Position numbers and translations under genes: made by a program | DNA from: Salpingoeca rosetta | Lineage: Eukaryota > Protista > Choanoflagellata | Length of the DNA stretch: 64,000 bases | Assembly (NCBI GenBank): GCA_033442325.1 | Contig: JAWQFM010000017.1 | Location: forward strand, 642,816 to 706,815 | Direction: 5' to 3' | Part shown: piece after piece, positions 56,721-64,000 of the stretch | How positions within the stretch are numbered: position 1 is the stretch's first letter | Layout of the letters: each line of letters opens with the position of its first letter | The notes under the pieces: generated by a model | Database searches by the model: none | Told to the model about the DNA's origin: nothing | Seen by the model: only the letters and a program-made list of their open reading frames with translations

Positions 56721-59168
56721 TCATGCAACCACGTTGTCGTAGATGGGTGCTTGTCGCCCTGATGACGTCGGTGGTAGTGGCGGTGGATTGTCGTACACAG
56801 GGGCATGTGACGTCGATCTGGCTTCATAGATCGCGGCACCATTGCAGTTGCTGTCAACCCGCCGCGTGCTGCTCTCGCCCCCGTCGCAAATGCCATCATC
56901 CCTGCCATCCAGCGCGTCATCGCCGCCACAGCCATCGTCCACTCCTTCAGACAGCACCCACGCCTGCACGGTTGCTGCTCCCCGCTCCTCTTGGCTTCCA
57001 ATGTCATACCTCCCTTCAGGCCAGAGATGCACGCCTGTGTATCGGAGTGATCCGTTGCATTGAAAACAGGCCATTGTTAACGAGGTGAGGTCCATGACGC
57101 GTGACGAACGCAGAGAGCAGGGGGTTGAAGAGTCACGGGGAATCTGCGAGGAAGAGGCGCAGAGCAAAACTTTGTCGAAAGCTGATCCAACCAACAGCAC
57201 GCACACGGGTCCAGCACAGCGCAACGCACCTCGAATCCGTTCACCGTTGGCGCTGCCGATGTCGTAGGTATCCTCACGCCAATGATGGGTACCTTGTGTA
57301 CACAAACAAGCGAACCCCACACGCACACGCACACAAACCAACGAGACTGTGAGTAGAACTTTTAACACCTGAAACCAGCGCTTCTTTGAGAAGGCAAAGT
57401 AACAGGAGGGCAACGGAACGAAGTCAGCGCCTTCAAACGCACCTCGAACGACATGGGCGTGCGTGGGCCGAACGTTGTCATATGTCAGCGTGCCAGAGGA
57501 AGGACGGAAGACAGGGTTGTCATACACTTGGGGTTCATGCTGTCCCTGATGAATCGTGCATGCAAGACGTGCGAATGAGCACAGTAGAGGTGAATGTAGA
57601 ATTGCTGGAAACAACATGGTGTAAACCAGTTCATGGACACACAAAGACGTCATGGCTGACAATGCGTACTTCGCTAGGGTCAGACGCGTTGTCTCAAGAA
57701 AAGCCCTCACACACAGACACACACACACACACACACACACCGGCGCTTCAATGTTGTTGATGCCAATGTCAGCGTGCTTGGTACGGCCGCATCGCCTTCG
57801 CTTCACAAGAACCACCGCCGCCGTGGTAAGGACTACCAATCCACAAACACCGCCAGCAATGCCGCCCCACGTGGCAGCGGAGATGCTGTTGGCGGTGGAC
57901 TGGCTTGCAGCCGGGTCGAGAGCTGTGGTCACTGGAGGCATGCTTCCTGTTGAGGATGCCACGAAGGAGGAAGAGGAGGAGGAAGAGGAGGAGGGATGCG
58001 TGCAGTTGCGGCCGCCGTTGTCGCTCACGTGACCGGCGATGCAGCTGCAGTTGTACGTGTGCAGCCCTGTGCGGGTGCACTCCGCGTTTGCCCCGCACAC
58101 GTTGTCGATCGAGCACGGGTCCACGGGCTGAGATGGCAGAAGTGGGGAGTTGGGGGGGAGAGAAATTGTGGACGCGGAGTGGTAAGGCAGTGAAGCGATG
58201 GTGATGGGATGGGTGAGATGTGAGTGAGATGGTGAAGAGGTGGCGCGACAGAAGCACGATGTGGCGCCAAACTGCAATGGCATGCATGAGCAGGCGCTGT
58301 GCTGACCTCGCACGGCGTGTTCGGTGGATCGCCGGCAAAGCCAGACCGGCACACGCACGAAGCCAAATCAGGGCCGTCAAACAGGCACCTGGCATGTTGA
58401 GGAGAGGAGATAAATGAGTCGCTCGGGTGAGTGTGGTGGATGGATGGATTGTCGTGGTGCATATGTGTGTGTATGTGTGGGTGTGTGAAACGCGCCACAG
58501 ACTGCGCCACAAGTGTGCACTGGTTGAAGCGCACACAGAAGAATAACAACGCACCCCTACGTGTGCCACTGACCTGGTTGAGTTTTCAAACCCGCAGCCG
58601 CCGTTGTCGGTGACGCATGGGTTGATGGGGAAGCAGTTGCGCCCCGTGGTGGACGTGTGCCCCTCATGGCACGTGCAGTTTCGTATCCCAGGCCCAGTGT
58701 GGATGCACCTGTGGTCGTGATGTTGCAGCAATGTGTGTATATATATATATATGTGTGTGTGTTGTGTGTGTGTGTTTGTGCGTATGTGTGCGCGCATGTG
58801 TGTGTGTGTGCGTGTGTGCGTGGATGCATGTGTGTGAGTGTGTGTGTGAGTGTGTGTGAGTGCACCAAACACTTCAAACTCTTCGACTCGTGCAGCTTGG
58901 GCATGTGCACCAACATTCAACACGCTGCCCATCTCAATCTGTTTCACACTCACAGCGTTGTTGATGCAGGTCCACACTGGCCGTTGTCTTCCTTACACGG
59001 GTTGATTGGCTGAAGGCGTGTTAGAGGGAGAAGAGAAGAAGCATGAGCGAACGGTTGAGGGTCGGAGTGAATGGGCCGATGGATTGTTCTTGAAAGAACA
59101 CGGACAGGACGCACACGTCCCAAACACCCAAACACGCAGCTTACGCACACGCAGTACATACGCAAGAC

Positions 59169-59260
<92 letters not shown>

Positions 59261-60741
59261 NNNNNNNNNNNNNNNNNNNNNNNNNNNNNNNNNNNNNNNN
59301 NNNNNNNNNNNNNNNNNNNNNNNNNNNNNNNNNNNNNNNNNNNNNNNNNNNNNNNNNNNNNNNNNNNNNNNNNNNNNNNNNNNNNNNNNNNNNNNNNNNN
59401 NNNNNNNNNNNNNNNNNNNNNNNNNNNNNNNNNNNNNNNNNNNNNNNNNNNNNNNNNNNNNNNNNNNNNNNNNNNNNNNNNNNNNNNNNNNNNNNNNNNN
59501 NNNNNNNNNNNNNNNNNNNNNNNNNNNNNNNNNNNNNNNNNNNNNNNNNNNNNNNNNNNNNNNNNNNNNNNNNNNNNNNNNNNNNNNNNNNNNNNNNNNN
59601 NNNNNNNNNNNNNNNNNNNNNNNNNNNNNNNNNNNNNNNNNNNNNNNNNNNNNNNNNNNNNNNNNNNNGGGCAGCGAAGTGAAGTGCAGTGCGGTTGGGC
59701 TTTGGGGTTGAGCATGTGTAAACGAAAACAGCCATGCACGAGCCTGCGTACACGCACGAACACGCACACACACACGCACACACACACACGCACACACACG
59801 CACACACACGCACACCGCACACACGCACACACGCACACAAACACACAGATCAACACACGTCCTGTGTAGATGCACGTGGAGTTGTCGCCGCAAAGCGTGG
59901 GCGTGTCCTCGCACGGGTTGACAACATCGCAGCTGCCGCCGTCCGCTCCGTCAAACCCGGGCTTGCAATCGCACTCGTTCGTGTTAGGACCCATGAAGCG
60001 ACACAGCTGCGTGTTTGCATCACAGCCGCCGTAGCCCTCCTTCTCGCACGGGTTGATGGGCCGGCAGTCCGTTTTCTCGGCGTTGGCAGACTCGTAACCC
60101 TCAACACACGTGCAGTGAAACTTGTCTGGACCATCATACACGCAGAGGGAGTTTTCGCCACAACGGCCCGGAACATCCTCGCAGGGGTTGATTGGGTCGC
60201 AGTTCGAATGGTCACTCGTGCTCGCAAACCGGTACCCGCCCTTGCACGCGCACTTGCTCTCGCCAGGGCCAAGATACGTGCACCTGCAGCCGTGAGGGTA
60301 GGGACAAGTGGGCGTTTGTGTGAGTGCGGATGTGTGTGTGTGTGTTTTTATGTGTGTGTGTGTGTGGTTATGTGTGCGTGCATGTGTATGTGAATGAGAG
60401 ACAAAGGGCAAAAGCGCACTCAGTCAGATGCACACACGTGTACACATACGTCTGCGCGCAAGAAGATGCGTCAAGAAGCAATGCACAATTGGGCAACCGA
60501 ACACACAGTCACTCACACTCCGTGCTGCTTGTCGCATCCACCAAAGGTTGACGTTTGGCAGGGGTCGATGGGAAAGCAGTCCTTTCCCGTGTCAGACTTG
60601 AATCCATCCATACACTGGCATTGCACTTGTTCATCGCGCACACACGTGCACGAGGTCGATCGTGCTGGGCCGCAGTCACCGTTGTTGCTCAGGCACAGGT
60701 CGGCTGTTTGGGCGAGGAGATCGAGCCAAACAAGAGACCGG

Positions 60742-60788
<47 letters not shown>

Positions 60789-61952
60789 GTAAGTGGACAC
60801 AACAAGATGGAGAGAATCGTGATCGCACACGCACGCATGCACATATGAACAAGCACACACACATAAGCACGCACACACATGCACATACAAACACACACAC
60901 ACACGCACATAGAGTCGCACAACCACAGAAGCCAGTGGGGCGTACTTGGTGTGTAGTTGATGGTGACGTCGATGTACTTGTTGTCACCGTCGAGGTCAAA
61001 GCGGTGGTCGCGGGAAACTGAGTTGCATCCATCGAACGTGAAGCTGTCCGTGTCACGGCCAAGCTGATTTGGTTGAAACAGAACAGAGCAACAGAGAGGC
61101 ACGAGAGACCGGGCGTGAACATGGTATGTTTGTTCGTACTCGTGGCGGGTGTGATAGATGCAACATGTAGAGTTGTAAGTCATGTGCTGGAATCAAGAAA
61201 GTAGGAACACAACTACATCGGACACCGAACTCACATCATCCGTGTCGCCCCAATGGTTGACACCCGCAAAGCCATCCAGATCGAAAGCGTGAAGCTCCAC
61301 CGAGAACTGCATACAGGAATGAGATGCTCAGGATGAGCAAAAGCGTGAAGCGAAAGGCGAATAGACTGAATGAAGAACAACCGCAAGCAGAGAATGCCAA
61401 CTCACCGTTGATGGGATGTCCGTGTTGGGGAACTCAAGCGTCTCATGCCATGCAGGAGAGTTGTCGTCCTCATCTTCAGTTGTGTGCATCCACCCTGTGT
61501 AATCAGGCACCCTCACTTCCACCACGGTGTCGCTTTCCCCACGTGGCCAGCCGTCACTGTCTTTGACTTTCCCGCCCTTAACAAGGACGGACACTCTGCC
61601 CGCTGTTGAGTAACGGAACGAAACAAAAGGAGAAGCATTTCGAACAAGCAACTCACGGAGTGAGACAATGAGAGAAGTTCCAAGGGCACGAATCTGAGAA
61701 GGTCAACAGGGTGTCTCCCGACGACGAAGACAAGTCTTCTAAGTCTTCGCAGACATGGAGCGATCAAAACGCGTGAAGCCCAGTCAAAACGAAACACGTA
61801 TCGGTCACGACCCTCCTCTTCTGCTTGAACTTCATCACTTCCTCCTTACCTTGAACGCAGAGACGGGGTTGGCTAATGCCTGCAAGCACCACCAACAACA
61901 ACGCCACAAGCACAGCATCGACGAAGCTGGTTCGCACTGTCCGCAGGTCCAT
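56721..61952 (-). CDS. Type-I receptor: signal peptide, extracellular C2 domain, >=8 EGF repeats, S/T stalk, TM, tyrosine-motif tail, no kinase
   Basis: Signal MDLRTVRTSFVDAVLVALLLVVLAG. C2-like GRVSVLVKGGKVKDSDGWPRGESDTVVEV..EDDNSPAWHETLEF..VELHAFDLD..DTDDLG. EGF units INPC..GGC..C...GP....C.C..GY/F. TM WGGIAGGVCGLVVLTTAAVVLV followed by KRRR. Tail YDNP/YDNV/YDIG motifs, ending IYDNVVA*. Confidence 0.85.
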
Positions 61953-63024
61953 GATGTTGCCACAGCGTTTTGCTTTTCTGGTGGCGTGTTTTGCCTGTAC
62001 TGTCCTTTGTCTTTAAAAATAGTCCACTGTCATAGAAATATACAATCATGTGACCTGCGTCGGTGCCGTGAAGCCATGACATTTGACACAACAGCATATT
62101 GACGCCAACAACGGTCACGATCAACGCCACTCCACAAATACGCAGACAGAGACCACCAACAGATCCGCAGAAATGTGTGCGACCCTCATGCGAGAAGCAA
62201 GATTAAACGGGAGAACACTCCAGTACACTCTGGTCGCGACAACAAACCCAGGGCCCGACTCCACCTCGCTTCATGGGTGCTGATACGCACCAGTAATGAA
62301 GGAGGTGAGCACAGGGATAGCAATGGAGGTGTGGTGGAGGTAGCAGACAACAGAGACCTTTCGTCACCACAAAAATAGCACATTGCAAACTCGTAGCAGT
62401 TTACATCGCATGTCCAAACCACACAAACTTGGCACAAACACAACACGACTGACATGTTTTGAAACACGGATGCCGCCAAAAACCAAACGGCCACGACGAT
62501 GATGAGTGTGCAAAGGCGGCGCAAGCGCTTGCGCCAAGCTGTGCTGTGTGGAGCTATCAGTCAACATGTTCTTATCTCGTTTGAGAGATAAGTGCGCTAT
62601 CACCGTGTTCCGAGAGCATGGGGTGTGGTGACTCTGATCAATTTGTCTCAGTTTGACCGAAGAACGTTTGAAAGGTTATTCCGCTTCAGATCGCTTGCCC
62701 ACTTGGAGCGCTTGGCCCGCAGTTTGCAGGTGAGGGACACATACACGGGAGCATATGGCAGACACTCCAGTGGACTGGAAGTGCTCGCTGTTGTAAGTTC
62801 ATGGTGGTGGTGCTGTTGTTGGAGACTTGTGTATGTGTGTGTGTGCAGAGTGTGCTGTGTGTGCTGTGTGTTGTGTGGGAGATTGTCTTGACAAGAGAGA
62901 GTTGTGTGTGTTTACTTGAGTTGTGAAGCAAACAAGGATGTACGATGAATGAACACTCCAACAGAAAGAAACAGAGCAGAAGACAAGAATTGTCGACGAC
63001 GCAAAGTGGTGACGTGGCAGTGTT

Positions 63025-63450: not shown

Positions 63451-64000
63451 TCAGAGGTCCTGACGCGGAGTCGAAGGACGTGGCGACCGGCCCGAATGAG
63501 GACGGGCCCGTGGCTGGCAGCCTGGCAGAGGACGCTGGTCGAACAGCATCGTGCAGAACTGAGCCGTCTTGGGCCGAGGGAGGATCTTCGTGAGGAGATC
63601 TGCGATCATGTGCTCCGTGGCGAGGTAGCTCAGCACAATCCTCTTGGTGTCGACGCACTCGCGGATGTAGTGGTACTTGACGAGGATGTGCCGCATGCGC
63701 GAGGCGGCGTGTTCGGCAACGCGCTGCGCCGGCTGGTTGTCCGTGTGGACGAGCGTGGGCTCGCACAGGACGGCGCCGGTGAGCTCCTCCTGGAGTTGGC
63801 GAAGGAACATGAGTTCCTGTGCGGTGGCTGCGAGAGCCATGTACTCCGCGTCGGCGGAGGCTGTGGCTACGGTGGCCTGCAGCTTGGAGTTCCAGGACAC
63901 GGGGCCCGTGGAACAGAAGACGACGAAGCCCGTGCGGGAACGTCGCGTGTCAACGTCGGAGGCGAACGACGCATCCGAGTACGCTGAGAGCACGCCGTCG
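63451..64000 (-). CDS. pol: Copia pol polyprotein C-terminus (RNase HI domain)
   Basis: LSAYSDASFASDVDTRRSRTGFVV..PVSWNSKLQATVATASADAEYMAL..HTDNQPA..RHILVKYHYIRE..EHMIADLLTK; open frame with catalytic D/E/D/D residues. Confidence 0.93.
   Translation of the reverse strand, partial: DGVLSAYSDASFASDVDTRRSRTGFVVFCSTGPVSWNSKLQATVATASADAEYMALAATAQELMFLRQLQEELTGAVLCEPTLVHTDNQPAQRVAEHAASRMRHILVKYHYIRECVDTKRIVLSYLATEHMIADLLTKILPRPKTAQFCTMLFDQRPLPGCQPRARPHSGRSPRPSTPRQDL

What the first reader, a model, noticed from the sequence alone, without database searches (positions are those of the whole stretch)
56721..61952. Kinase-less receptor with an extracellular C2 domain on stabilin-like EGF repeats: candidate membrane-lipid-sensing or phagocytic receptor
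Seen: signal peptide, then a C2-like domain that keeps acidic loop residues (KDSD..GESD; FDLD..DTDD), at least 8 EGF repeats of the INPC..GGC..C..GP..C.C..GY type, one TM and a Tyr-rich tail. Known: C2 domains are almost always cytosolic; perforin is the classic secreted exception and uses its C2 domain for Ca2+-dependent membrane docking. This EGF spacing resembles stabilin scavenger receptors. Inference: the receptor presents a Ca2+-loaded lipid-binding domain outward to recognise prey or neighbour membranes and signals through phosphotyrosine docking. I do not recognise this architecture from any named family.
Basis: partly seen in the sequence, partly recalled or inferred. Interest (0 to 1): 0.78.

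Follow-up and report, generated by a model that had tools for sequence, protein, structure and literature searches.

The report
Outward-facing C2 head on EGF-stalk receptor
This choanoflagellate (Salpingoeca rosetta) gene does encode a kinase-less surface protein with a real C2 (calcium/lipid-binding type) domain at its outer tip, on a stalk of EGF repeats, but two sister genes with this layout were already drawn in a 2016 paper and nobody has tested what the family does.

Summary
On the minus strand lies Salpingoeca rosetta PTSG_06572: signal-peptide exon, three C2 exons, EGF exons, one TM segment and a tail with 7 Tyr and no kinase. All visible junctions are GT..AG and are seen in RNA.

The N-terminal domain is a true C2:
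- Pfam C2 scores 23.5 bits on the cut domain (cut-off 22).
- A family profile hits 75 solved chains, nearly all C2.
- The AlphaFold model (pLDDT 89) matches C2 structures at Z 14-15, perforin C2 at 14.2.
- All five canonical Ca2+-ligand aspartates are invariant in the family.

The assembly gap sits in an intron. The flanks cannot be spliced directly in frame. A collinear paralogue, PTSG_12137, has three exons (115 aa) there, which would restore the frame and give 10 EGF repeats.

The public gene model is wrong at both ends. Most RNA depth on the shared exons comes from the paralogue; this copy runs at roughly 2-10% of it.

The family has 5 loci in S. rosetta and members in three other craspedid choanoflagellates. 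Shigeno-Nakazawa et al. 2016 (PMC5043372) already drew signal peptide, C2, EGF, TM and YxxP tail for PTSG_12435/12436, and this scan noted sister genes on other DNA. So this is a new member of a known, unnamed, untested kind. The stabilin likeness is not supported. Lipid binding and phosphotyrosine signalling remain inference.

The parts
61850..61952 (-). Exon 1 (coding part): start ATG at 61952 and a signal-peptide-like segment. The transcript's 5' UTR reaches at least 62100.
   Evidence: ORF and splice donor GTAAGG. Hydropathy. A cDNA contig of run X4 has no mismatch over 61850-62100 and joins 61850 to 61602; 2 raw RNA reads in X22 show the same joint.
61406..61602 (-). Exon 2: first half of the C2 domain (strands 1-4). 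It holds Ca2+-binding loop 1 (KDSDGWPRGESD) and the NSPAW motif.
   Evidence: Pfam C2 hit. Joint 61406|61306 in RNA. Alignments A1 and A3.
61235..61306 (-). Exon 3: C2 strand 5 and the extended Ca2+-binding loop 3 (FDLD...DTDD).
   Evidence: Phase-0 exon with AG/GT borders. Joints on both sides in RNA. D77, D79, D91 and D92 are invariant in the family.
60946..61063 (-). Exon 4: C2 strands 6-8, ending ...VTINYTP.
   Evidence: Joint 60946|60703 in RNA. The model has strands at residues 90-131.
60517..60703 (-). Exon 5: EGF repeat 1 and the start of repeat 2.
   Evidence: joint 60517|60283.
59859..60283 (-). Exon 6: rest of EGF repeat 2, repeats 3-4, and the start of repeat 5. It ends in phase 1 at donor GTGTGT.
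   Evidence: Pfam EGF_3 30.5 bits, plus cEGF and FXa_inhibition. Borders.
59261..59668 (.). Assembly gap inside an intron. It most likely hides three exons (344 nt, 115 aa, about 2.7 EGF repeats).
   Evidence: Both flanks align collinearly to paralogue locus L010 right up to the gap edges. The matching paralogue interval is 824 nt and holds exons for residues 355-469 of PTSG_12137. The phase arithmetic needs a missing length of 2 mod 3, and 344 nt fits.
58954..59009 (-). Exon after the gap (PINPCKEDNGQCGPASTT): start of EGF repeat 8. The public model PTSG_06572 skips it.
   Evidence: same exon in the paralogue. Joint 58954|58708 in RNA.
58574..58708 (-). Exon: rest of EGF repeat 8 and start of repeat 9.
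58307..58388 (-). Exon: rest of EGF repeat 9.
57741..58127 (-). Exon: EGF repeat 10, Ser/Thr-rich stalk, transmembrane segment, KRRR stop-transfer and juxtamembrane region. Homology to the paralogue ends at 57854, at the start of the TM segment.
   Evidence: Paralogue-derived reads peel off at 57854.
57443..57545 (-). Tail exon with the YDNP and YDNV motifs.
   Evidence: X4 contig record 1 has no mismatches here.
57230..57292 (-). Tail exon with a YDIG motif.
   Evidence: Joints 57443|57292 and 57230|57034.
56721..57034 (-). Last coding exon with YDIG, YEAR, YDNP and YDNV motifs. Stop codon at 56723-56721; the 3' UTR continues beyond 56700.
   Evidence: X4 contig record 1 has no mismatches over 56700-57033. 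This tail is unique in the genome.

Best explanation
The locus is Salpingoeca rosetta PTSG_06572. It is a transcribed, apparently intact member of a small choanoflagellate family of type I membrane proteins. The layout is a signal peptide, one C2 domain at the mature N-terminus, a stalk of EGF repeats (8 visible, probably 10), a Ser/Thr-rich linker, one TM helix, and a cytoplasmic tail with repeated tyrosine motifs and no catalytic domain.

Shown here:
- the exon structure and its transcription;
- the C2 fold, with type II strand order;
- conservation of all five canonical Ca2+-coordinating aspartates;
- the outside location of the C2 domain, which follows because it is contiguous with disulfide-rich EGF modules between a signal peptide and the only TM segment.

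Inferred:
- In sea water (about 10 mM Ca2+) the C2 sites would be permanently filled.
- The head would then act as a constitutive, Ca2+-bridged binder of a membrane or other anionic surface. Aromatic residues in its long loops 1 and 3 would help, much as in perforin's C2.
- The EGF rod holds this head tens of nanometres from the cell's own membrane.
- Engagement or clustering would lead to phosphorylation of the tail tyrosines by one of the organism's many tyrosine kinases.
- The phosphorylated motifs would recruit SH2 adaptors: YDNP is a Crk-type YxxP motif and YDNV a Grb2-type YxN motif.

The gene arose by duplication of an ectodomain cassette (exon 2 to the start of the TM segment, about 90% identical to PTSG_12137, introns included). 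That cassette was joined to an unrelated signal peptide, TM segment and tail. The same outer sensor is therefore wired to a different cytoplasmic output.

My confidence is about 0.9 for the architecture and topology and about 0.3-0.4 for the lipid-binding and SH2-docking mechanism.
For: Gene identity: the window exon is 98% identical to PTSG_06572, and the paralogue PTSG_12137 is also found.

Gene model:
- Canonical splice sites and consistent phases.
- Ten junctions seen as joints in RNA, on the expected strand.
- Window-specific cDNA contigs with no mismatch cover the signal-peptide exon joined to the first C2 exon, and the tail exons.

C2 assignment:
- Pfam C2 scores 23.5 bits on the cut domain, against a cut-off of 22.
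- Family members score 30.8, 43.4 and 27.7 bits.
- phmmer against 1.84 billion representatives returns family members plus canonical multi-C2 proteins.
- The family profile hits 75 solved sequences, nearly all C2 domains, perforin included.
- The AlphaFold2 model has pLDDT 89.3 and pTM 0.84.
- The 50 best Foldseek hits are all C2. VIA-align gives Z 14-15, with perforin C2 at Z 14.2 and rmsd 2.0 A.

Ca2+ ligands: D19, D27, D77, D79, D91 and D92 are invariant in the family. They align with the SDPY and DxD...D positions of synaptotagmin-1 C2A and C2B.

Family: 5 loci in the genome. Members occur in Microstomoeca roanoka, Hartaetosiga balthica and Craspedida sp. UC1, the last with a cytoplasmic SH2 domain.

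Selection: exons are 96.4% identical to the paralogue and introns 92.7%. There are 28 synonymous and 20 non-synonymous codon differences.

Tail: motifs listed. The choanoflagellate Crk SH2 domain binds pYDVP peptides from a different S. rosetta YxxP-tail membrane protein, PTSG_05573, which is not a C2 family member (PMC5043372).
Against: - No biochemical or genetic data exist for any family member.
- In the context of the whole protein the Pfam C2 score is below threshold (19.7 bits against 22).
- Loops 1 and 3 are longer than in canonical C2 domains. Loop 3 is the least confident part of the model (block mean pLDDT 59), so the Ca2+ site geometry is not established.
- Many C2 domains bind proteins rather than lipids.
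- This copy is weakly expressed. At paralogue-discriminating sites 0-10% of reads carry the window's letter, and contig depth is 50-112 against 2100.
- Part of the ectodomain is unread because of the gap.
- No signal-peptide predictor was available. Cleavage is inferred from hydropathy and from the same arrangement in every family member.
- Tyrosine makes up only about 4% of the tail; it is the repeated Y-D-x-x context that stands out.
Confidence: 0.45

Rival explanations
1. Adhesion or matrix reading. The C2 head binds a protein or glycan partner rather than lipid, for example the extracellular matrix of rosettes, the theca, or another cell's surface protein. The family then acts as adhesion molecules whose tails link to Crk-type adaptors, much as the metazoan integrin, p130Cas and Crk system does.
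For: - EGF arrays are typical of adhesion and matrix proteins.
- Several C2 domains are known protein-binding modules (established knowledge).
- A relative in Craspedida UC1 adds HYR and Ig-like adhesion-type domains.
Against: All five Ca2+-ligand aspartates and the aromatic loop residues are conserved across the family. That pattern is expected for Ca2+-dependent membrane binding. It is usually lost in C2 domains that bind only proteins.
Confidence: 0.25
2. Redundant young duplicate. PTSG_06572 is a recent, weakly expressed copy of the highly expressed PTSG_12137. It has little function of its own, and its new tail may be non-functional or on the way to decay.
For: - About 90% DNA identity to the paralogue, introns included.
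- At discriminating sites 90-100% of reads come from the paralogue (for example 95 of 95 at 60073), and contig depth is 50-112 against 2100.
- The tail has no relative elsewhere in the genome.
Against: - The reading frame is open in all 13 visible exons, with canonical splice sites.
- The gene is transcribed and correctly spliced, including its own signal-peptide and tail exons.
- Exons are more conserved than introns, and synonymous differences exceed non-synonymous ones despite fewer synonymous sites (rough dN/dS about 0.24).
- The tail carries a regular set of Y-D-x-x motifs.
Confidence: 0.15
3. Cis-acting sensor. The C2 head folds back onto the cell's own outer leaflet, or onto the collar microvilli, and reports changes in its own membrane composition or in external Ca2+ rather than recognising foreign membranes.
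For: The C2 fold and Ca2+ ligands. This reading rests mainly on general reasoning.
Against: - A stalk of about 10 EGF repeats plus a mucin-like linker places the head far from the cell's own membrane.
- Sea-water Ca2+ should saturate the sites, so sensing Ca2+ is unlikely (established chemistry, inference).
Confidence: 0.08
4. Gene-model artefact. The C2 exons belong to a different transcript from the EGF and TM exons, or the C2 resemblance is a chance match.
For: The public model PTSG_06572 does begin with an unrelated copia-like exon, and the Pfam C2 score on the whole protein is below threshold.
Against: - RNA joints link every exon from the signal peptide through the C2 domain into the EGF repeats.
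- The same order is found in the intact paralogue and in transcriptome-derived proteins of three other species.
- Fold and profile evidence for C2 is strong.
Confidence: 0.02

Closest known systems
S. rosetta PTSG_12435 / PTSG_12436 (Shigeno-Nakazawa et al. 2016, Sci Rep 6:34349, PMC5043372, Fig. 6)
   Same: - Same genome and same layout: signal peptide, C2 domain directly after it, EGF repeats (in 12436), one TM segment, a cytoplasmic tail with YxxP tyrosine motifs and no kinase.
- The PTSG_12435 C2 aligns end to end with this gene's C2 (E 4e-12, 29% identity).
- Both lie among the 5 family loci found in the genome.
   Different: - Only about 29-40% identity in the C2 domain.
- PTSG_12435 has a long mucin stalk in place of the EGF array.
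- Their tails are rich in YDVP and YDLP. This gene's tail has YDNP, YDNV and YDIG and is unrelated in sequence.
- The paper did not mention PTSG_06572 or PTSG_12137. It did not analyse the C2 domain or define a family.
PTSG_12137, the paralogue on another contig
   Same: The ectodomain cassette, from C2 exon 2 to the start of the TM segment, is collinear. Exons are 96.4% identical and introns 92.7%. The exon structure is the same.
   Different: - The signal peptide, TM segment and tail are unrelated.
- Its tail is a single exon with NPVY, YSAL, YSHL and YDVP motifs.
- It is expressed roughly 10-40 times more strongly in the runs examined.
Perforin-1 C2 domain (PDB 4Y1T, 3NSJ)
   Same: A secreted, outward-acting C2 domain next to an EGF-like module. 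Same fold and strand order (Z 14.2, rmsd 2.0 A over 117 residues). The family profile reaches it (E 0.002). Both have Ca2+ ligands and aromatic residues in the binding loops.
   Different: - Perforin's C2 is C-terminal to a MACPF pore-forming domain and an EGF module, and the protein is soluble.
- Here the C2 is N-terminal on a membrane-anchored receptor and there is no MACPF domain.
- Sequence identity is only about 16%, no closer than to cytosolic C2 domains.
CED-1 / Draper / MEGF10 engulfment receptors
   Same: Type I receptors without a kinase, with a long EGF array and tyrosine-motif tails. By motif inspection only, the paralogue PTSG_12137 and M. roanoka P0003 carry NPxY plus two YxxL motifs.
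   Different: - There is no EMI domain, and the EGF type differs.
- The window gene's own tail has neither NPxY nor YxxL.
- No homology was shown; the resemblance is functional analogy at best.
Stabilin-1/-2 scavenger receptors
   Same: Multiple EGF-like repeats on a type I membrane protein.
   Different: No fasciclin (FAS1) or Link domain was detected. The closest solved EGF sequence is NELL1. Stabilins have no C2 domain.

Membership tests
C2 domain (Pfam PF00168) | Score above Pfam's gathering cut-off (22 bits) | tested here: met
   The cut domain P0001:114-254 scores 23.5 bits, E 6.5e-5. Within the whole protein it scores only 19.7 bits. Relatives score 30.8, 43.4 and 27.7 bits.
C2 domain (Pfam PF00168) | Eight-stranded beta-sandwich C2 fold | tested here: met
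   The AlphaFold2 model has pLDDT 89.3. The 50 best Foldseek hits are all C2 domains at probability 1.00. VIA-align Z is 14-15 over 108-125 residues. The strand order, with loop 1 after the first strand and three strands after loop 3, indicates type II topology.
C2 domain (Pfam PF00168) | Five acidic Ca2+ ligands in loops 1 and 3 (Ca2+-dependent subclass) | tested here: met
   D19, D27, D77, D79, D91 and D92 are invariant in family alignment A3. They align with the ligand positions of synaptotagmin-1 C2A and C2B.
C2 domain (Pfam PF00168) | Ca2+-dependent phospholipid binding | not testable with these tools
   Needs liposome or lipid-overlay assays with and without Ca2+.
Choanoflagellate C2-EGF-TM-Tyr-tail proteins (PTSG_12435/12436 type, PMC5043372) | C2 domain directly after an N-terminal signal peptide | tested here: met
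   Exon 1 has a hydrophobic core and is spliced to the first C2 strand. All family members show the same arrangement.
Choanoflagellate C2-EGF-TM-Tyr-tail proteins (PTSG_12435/12436 type, PMC5043372) | Homology of the C2 domain to that of PTSG_12435 | tested here: met
   BLASTP E 4e-12 over the whole domain. The family profile hits the C16 tandem loci at 1.2e-9 and 1.2e-6. The first of these loci was identified as PTSG_12435.
Choanoflagellate C2-EGF-TM-Tyr-tail proteins (PTSG_12435/12436 type, PMC5043372) | Single TM segment and a cytoplasmic tail with YxxP motifs, no kinase | tested here: met
   TM segment followed by KRRR. Two YDNP (YxxP) motifs plus YDNV x2, YDIG x2 and YEAR. No kinase or other Pfam domain in the tail. 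The transcript ends soon after the stop codon.
Perforin / MACPF proteins | MACPF pore-forming domain N-terminal to EGF and C2 | tested here: not met
   No MACPF hit in P0001 or P0002. The C2 domain is N-terminal.
Stabilin scavenger receptors | Fasciclin (FAS1) domains and a Link (hyaluronan-binding) domain among EGF clusters | tested here: not met
   The Pfam scans show only EGF_3, cEGF, FXa_inhibition and C2.
CED-1 / Draper / MEGF10 | N-terminal EMI domain; NPxY and YxxL motifs in the tail | tested here: not met
   No EMI hit. The window tail has neither NPxY nor YxxL. The paralogue tail has both motif types.
Receptor tyrosine kinases | Cytoplasmic tyrosine kinase domain | tested here: not met
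   No kinase hit in the read-through frame covering the tail exons or in P0001 and P0002.

The most novel reading that the evidence does not exclude
The C2-EGF family could be the choanoflagellate's direct, Ca2+-dependent lipid-recognition receptors on the cell surface. They would bind membranes of bacterial prey, outer-membrane vesicles, or bacterial lipid cues such as the sulfonolipid and lysophospholipid rosette-inducing factors, whose receptor is not known to me. Ectodomain-cassette duplication with tail swapping (PTSG_12137 against PTSG_06572) would wire one lipid sensor to different SH2-adaptor outputs: an engulfment-type NPxY/YxxL tail against a Crk/Grb2-type YDNP/YDNV tail. That would be a pre-animal analogue of the CED-1/Draper type of engulfment receptor.
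Probability: 0.12. Interest if true: 0.85.

Novelty: new member of a known kind. Interest (0 to 1): 0.45.

Why it matters
C2 domains almost always work on the cytosolic face of membranes; perforin is the textbook secreted exception. Here a whole small family in the closest relatives of animals puts a C2 domain with intact Ca2+ ligands on the outside of the cell. It sits at the tip of an EGF stalk, and the tails look like docking sites for SH2 adaptors.

If the head binds lipids, these proteins are candidates for how a bacterivorous, bacteria-responsive protist recognises foreign membranes. They would also show how phosphotyrosine signalling was fed by kinase-less receptors before animals arose.

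For this locus the practical gains are:
- a corrected gene model, with a true signal-peptide exon, a true 3' end and an exon that the public model skips;
- the finding that the assembly gap hides about 115 residues;
- a warning that most RNA-seq signal on its ectodomain exons is cross-mapping from PTSG_12137.

The architecture itself was already published for two paralogues in 2016, so the news value lies in the family definition and the C2 analysis, not in the discovery of the layout.

Tried and rejected
- Single-sequence AlphaFold2 of the C2 region gave a poor model (pLDDT 57.8). It was replaced by a run with a 24-sequence alignment.
- A single-sequence search of solved structures found nothing significant; the best hits were tailspikes at E 0.34. 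The family profile was needed.
- PF27506, listed in the precomputed Pfam hits, might have been a curated family for the N-terminal domain. It is not in the local library. It turned out to be EGF_ATRAID_C, a weak EGF hit.
- A word-index search with the C2 region of PTSG_12137 returned only the two S. rosetta paralogues, so it added nothing on taxonomic spread.
- Searching papers for 'extracellular C2 domain' returned only immunoglobulin C2-set domains. The gene identifiers PTSG_06572 and PTSG_12137 occur in no main text searched.
- Run X10 laid no contigs on the stretch.
- I considered a special kinship with perforin or with the bacterial astacin-C2-EGF proteins. I rejected it because both rank below cytosolic multi-C2 proteins by sequence and tie with them by structure.
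- The stabilin kinship was rejected.
- I did not build or search a joined spliced model of the corrected gene. Exons were handled one by one by reference. The database proteins P0001 and P0002 served for the domain-level searches and the fold.

Full report
WHAT IS THERE

The finding lies on the minus strand of a Salpingoeca rosetta contig. A word-index protein search with the stop-free frame over the TM exon returned PTSG_06572 (702 aa, 98% identical, 'hypothetical protein') and a paralogue, PTSG_12137 (799 aa), on another contig. I read the sequence and computed borders and phases exon by exon. This gives 13 visible coding exons, all with AG/GT borders.
- 61952-61850: start codon and signal-peptide-like segment.
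- 61602-61406, 61306-61235, 61063-60946: the C2 domain.
- 60703-60517 and 60283-59859: EGF repeats 1 to 5, the last cut by the gap.
- The gap.
- 59009-58954, 58708-58574, 58388-58307: EGF repeats 8 and 9.
- 58127-57741: EGF repeat 10, Ser/Thr stalk, TM segment and juxtamembrane region.
- 57545-57443, 57292-57230 and 57034-56721: the tail, with the stop codon at 56723-56721.

RNA EVIDENCE

I laid two stranded raw RNA-seq runs and two sets of run contigs on 56700-62100 (5,401 letters). Ten of the junctions appear as GT..AG joints on the minus strand. They include 61850|61602 (signal-peptide exon to C2) and 60946|60703 (C2 to EGF).

There is an important caveat. Most reads on the ectodomain exons carry fixed differences, for example 95 of 95 reads at 60073 and 73 of 73 at 60169. 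Their loose ends spell sequences of the paralogue PTSG_12137. So most of that depth is cross-mapping from the paralogue.

Evidence specific to the window gene does exist:
- A 529-nt contig of run X4 has no mismatch over 61850-62100. It joins the signal-peptide exon to C2 exon 2 and carries the window's letter at the discriminating site 61528.
- Two raw reads in X22 show the same joint.
- An 877-nt contig has no mismatch over the TM exon and three tail exons.

From discriminating sites and contig depths (50-112 against about 2100), this copy is expressed at roughly 2-10% of the paralogue in these samples.

THE GAP (tested first, as asked)

The sequence on both sides of 59261-59668 is intron. 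The upstream coding part ends in phase 1 and the exon at 59009 starts in phase 0, so splicing them directly would shift the frame.

Window positions 61609-59669 align collinearly, introns included, to paralogue locus L010 positions 1162-3053 at 90% identity. Positions 59195-57854 align to L010 3878-5197 at 89%. The paralogue interval that matches the gap is 824 nt. It holds three exons for residues 355-469 of PTSG_12137, about 344 nt or 115 aa, which is EGF repeats 5b to 7. A length of 344 nt is 2 mod 3, exactly what restores the frame, and gives a total of 861 codons.

The real gap is therefore probably about 750 nt rather than 408, and it hides about 2.7 EGF repeats. This is an inference from collinearity, not a reading of the missing letters.

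THE PUBLIC MODEL IS WRONG IN THREE PLACES
- Its first 115 residues come from a copia-like fragment at 63810-63466, not from the signal-peptide exon that the RNA supports.
- It bridges the gap by skipping exon 59009-58954.
- It ends early (...ERIRDSP), whereas RNA supports the last exon running to 56721.

IS THE N-TERMINAL DOMAIN A C2 DOMAIN? YES
- Pfam C2 is just below its cut-off on the whole proteins (19.7 and 20.8 bits against 22). It is above the cut-off on the excised window domain (23.5 bits).
- Relatives score clearly above it: 30.8, 43.4 and 27.7 bits.
- An exhaustive phmmer search of 1.84 billion representatives gave 28 hits. They are family members with the same N-terminal placement, then canonical multi-C2 proteins, then secreted bacterial astacin-C2-EGF proteins.
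- A six-sequence family profile hits 75 solved sequences. Nearly all are C2 domains: ferlins, synaptotagmins, E-Syt, Munc13 and perforin.
- With a 24-sequence alignment, AlphaFold2 gives pLDDT 89.3 and pTM 0.84.
- The 50 best Foldseek matches are all C2 domains.
- VIA-align gives Z 14-15, with perforin's C2 at Z 14.2, rmsd 2.0 A over 117 residues, tied with the best.
- The strand order, with the first strand leading straight into loop 1 and three strands after loop 3, is the type II C2 topology.

The five canonical Ca2+ ligands are invariant in the family: one Asp before Gly and the S-D in loop 1, then D-x-D and the D-D-L-G aspartate in loop 3. They align with the ligand positions of synaptotagmin-1 C2A and C2B. 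Loops 1 and 3 are longer than usual and carry Trp and Phe. Loop 3 is the least confident part of the model.

TOPOLOGY

The C2 domain follows directly after a hydrophobic N-terminal segment. That segment has upstream Arg residues and small residues at positions -3 and -1. The C2 is followed, with no intervening hydrophobic segment, by disulfide-rich EGF modules, a Ser/Thr stalk and the only TM helix with KRRR on its C-terminal side. The C2 domain must therefore be on the same side as the EGF repeats, which is outside the cell. Every relative has the same arrangement. No signal-peptide predictor was available.

THE FAMILY

A profile search of the genome finds 5 loci:
- this one;
- PTSG_12137 on C10;
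- a tandem pair on C16;
- one on C26.

Relatives with the same layout occur in Microstomoeca roanoka (two proteins), Hartaetosiga balthica and Craspedida sp. UC1. The UC1 protein is 2,055 aa, has extra HYR, TNFR and Ig-like modules, and carries an SH2 domain in its own tail. Nothing outside choanoflagellates showed this architecture among the 28 phmmer hits. That search used a single sequence, so more distant members could have been missed.

EVOLUTION OF THIS COPY

Homology to PTSG_12137 runs from 7 nt before exon 2 to the start of the TM segment (61609-57854). Exons are 96.4% identical and introns 92.7%. There are 28 synonymous and 20 non-synonymous codon differences in 497 codons, a rough dN/dS of about 0.24.

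The signal peptide, TM segment and tail are unrelated between the two genes. The window's tail is split into four exons and has no relative elsewhere in the genome. So a shared ectodomain cassette is joined to different cytoplasmic outputs.

TAILS
- The window tail has 7 Tyr: YDNP twice (a YxxP, Crk-type motif), YDNV twice (a YxN, Grb2-type motif), YDIG twice, and YEAR.
- PTSG_12137 and its M. roanoka relative share NPxY followed by two YxxL motifs, plus YDVP or YDLP. This recalls CED-1/Draper tails by motif inspection only.

PRIOR KNOWLEDGE

A words look-up in this scan's earlier notes pointed to a 2016 paper, which I then read: Shigeno-Nakazawa et al., Sci Rep 6:34349 (PMC5043372).

Its Fig. 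[quoted passage not shown] It adds that 12436 has EGF-like repeats and that both are transmembrane proteins with YxxP motifs in the cytosolic region. The paper also shows by ITC that a choanoflagellate Crk SH2 domain binds pYDVP peptides from PTSG_05573, a different YxxP-tail membrane protein without a C2 domain.

I verified that the first gene of the C16 tandem pair is PTSG_12435 (100% identity). Its C2 domain aligns end to end with the window's (E 4e-12).

The architecture is therefore published for two paralogues. The family is unnamed, the C2 domain was not analysed, PTSG_06572 and PTSG_12137 are not mentioned in any searched main text, and no function has been tested. This scan has also noted sister genes on other pieces of the genome.

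HOW IT MOST LIKELY WORKS

Shown:
- an outward-facing, type II C2 domain with a complete Ca2+-ligand set;
- its position at the tip of an EGF rod;
- a kinase-less tail with regular tyrosine motifs;
- transcription and purifying selection.

Inferred:
- in sea water the Ca2+ sites are filled, so the head is a constitutive Ca2+-bridged binder of a membrane or other anionic surface in trans;
- clustering leads to tail phosphorylation and SH2-adaptor recruitment.

Rivals are a protein- or glycan-binding adhesion role, a nearly redundant young duplicate, and a cis-acting membrane sensor. The artefact reading is excluded.

The stabilin likeness is not supported, since there are no FAS1 or Link domains, the EGF families are generic, and NELL1 is the closest solved sequence. 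The claim of an unrecognised architecture has to be softened in view of the 2016 figure.

PROCEDURE NOTES

I did not build or search a joined spliced model. Exons were handled one by one by reference, and the database proteins P0001 and P0002 served for the domain analyses.

VERDICT

This is a real, correctly read, unusual receptor and a new member of a known but unnamed and uncharacterised kind. Interest is moderate at 0.45. It would be higher if lipid binding or a role in recognising bacteria were shown.

Noticed in passing
window 63466-63810 (minus strand): The first 115 residues of the public model PTSG_06572 come from a copia-type retrotransposon fragment (...KYHYIRECVDTKRIVLSYLATEHMIADLLTK...). 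The annotation spliced it onto C2 exon 2. RNA instead supports the signal-peptide exon at 61952-61850.
   Followed up: partly
window 57854-61609 against L010 (G000:C10:672500-682499) 1162-5197: There is an ectodomain-cassette duplication. The two genes are about 90% identical, introns included, from exon 2 to the start of the TM segment. Their signal peptides, TM segments and tails are unrelated. RNA-seq reads from the highly expressed paralogue cross-map onto the window gene at 95-99% identity and would inflate its apparent expression.
   Followed up: yes
P0002 (PTSG_12137) tail and P0003 (Microstomoeca roanoka) tail: Both tails share, in the same order, a membrane-proximal NPxY motif and two YxxL motifs (NPVY/YSAL/YSHL and NPTY/YAEL/YNHL), plus YDVP or YDLP. 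This combination recalls CED-1/Draper/MEGF10 engulfment receptors. It was seen by motif inspection only.
   Followed up: partly
P0009 (Craspedida sp. UC1, 2,055 aa): This family member has the same signal peptide, C2 and EGF start. It adds TNFR, HYR and many Ig-like (DUF5011-type) modules, and it carries an SH2 domain inside its own Tyr-rich cytoplasmic tail.
   Followed up: no
P0014, P0015, P0022 (metagenomic; the P0015 cluster is named M12 family metallopeptidase of a Pseudomonadota MAG): These are apparently bacterial secreted proteins that combine an astacin protease with C2 and EGF domains. Their C2 loop 1 (DRDGW..GDSDPYV) resembles that of the choanoflagellate family. They are another case of C2 domains outside the cytosol.
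   Followed up: partly
L013 (G000:C16:1200500-1210499) 2350-6095 and 6500-9350: This is the tandem pair PTSG_12435 / PTSG_12436. The first gene has the C2 domain, one Cys-rich module, a long Thr/Ser mucin stalk, a TM segment and a tail with at least 7 YxxP motifs in its last exon. The second starts about 400 nt downstream with its own signal peptide, C2 domain and EGF array.
   Followed up: partly
window 59170-59260, 59750-59850, 60740-60800, 57700-57750 and other introns: The introns are full of (GT)n/(CA)n microsatellites, and many lack stop codons. The result is long spurious open frames, such as a 548-aa frame over 58367-56724. These repeats probably caused the assembly gap.
   Followed up: no
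C2 exon 4 and EGF exon 5 (window 60946-61063, 60517-60703): The C2 domain has one Cys (FDGC) and EGF repeat 1 has 7 Cys instead of 6. The UC1 relative lacks the C2 Cys and has 6 Cys in EGF repeat 1. This suggests a disulfide between the C2 domain and EGF repeat 1. It was not modelled.
   Followed up: no
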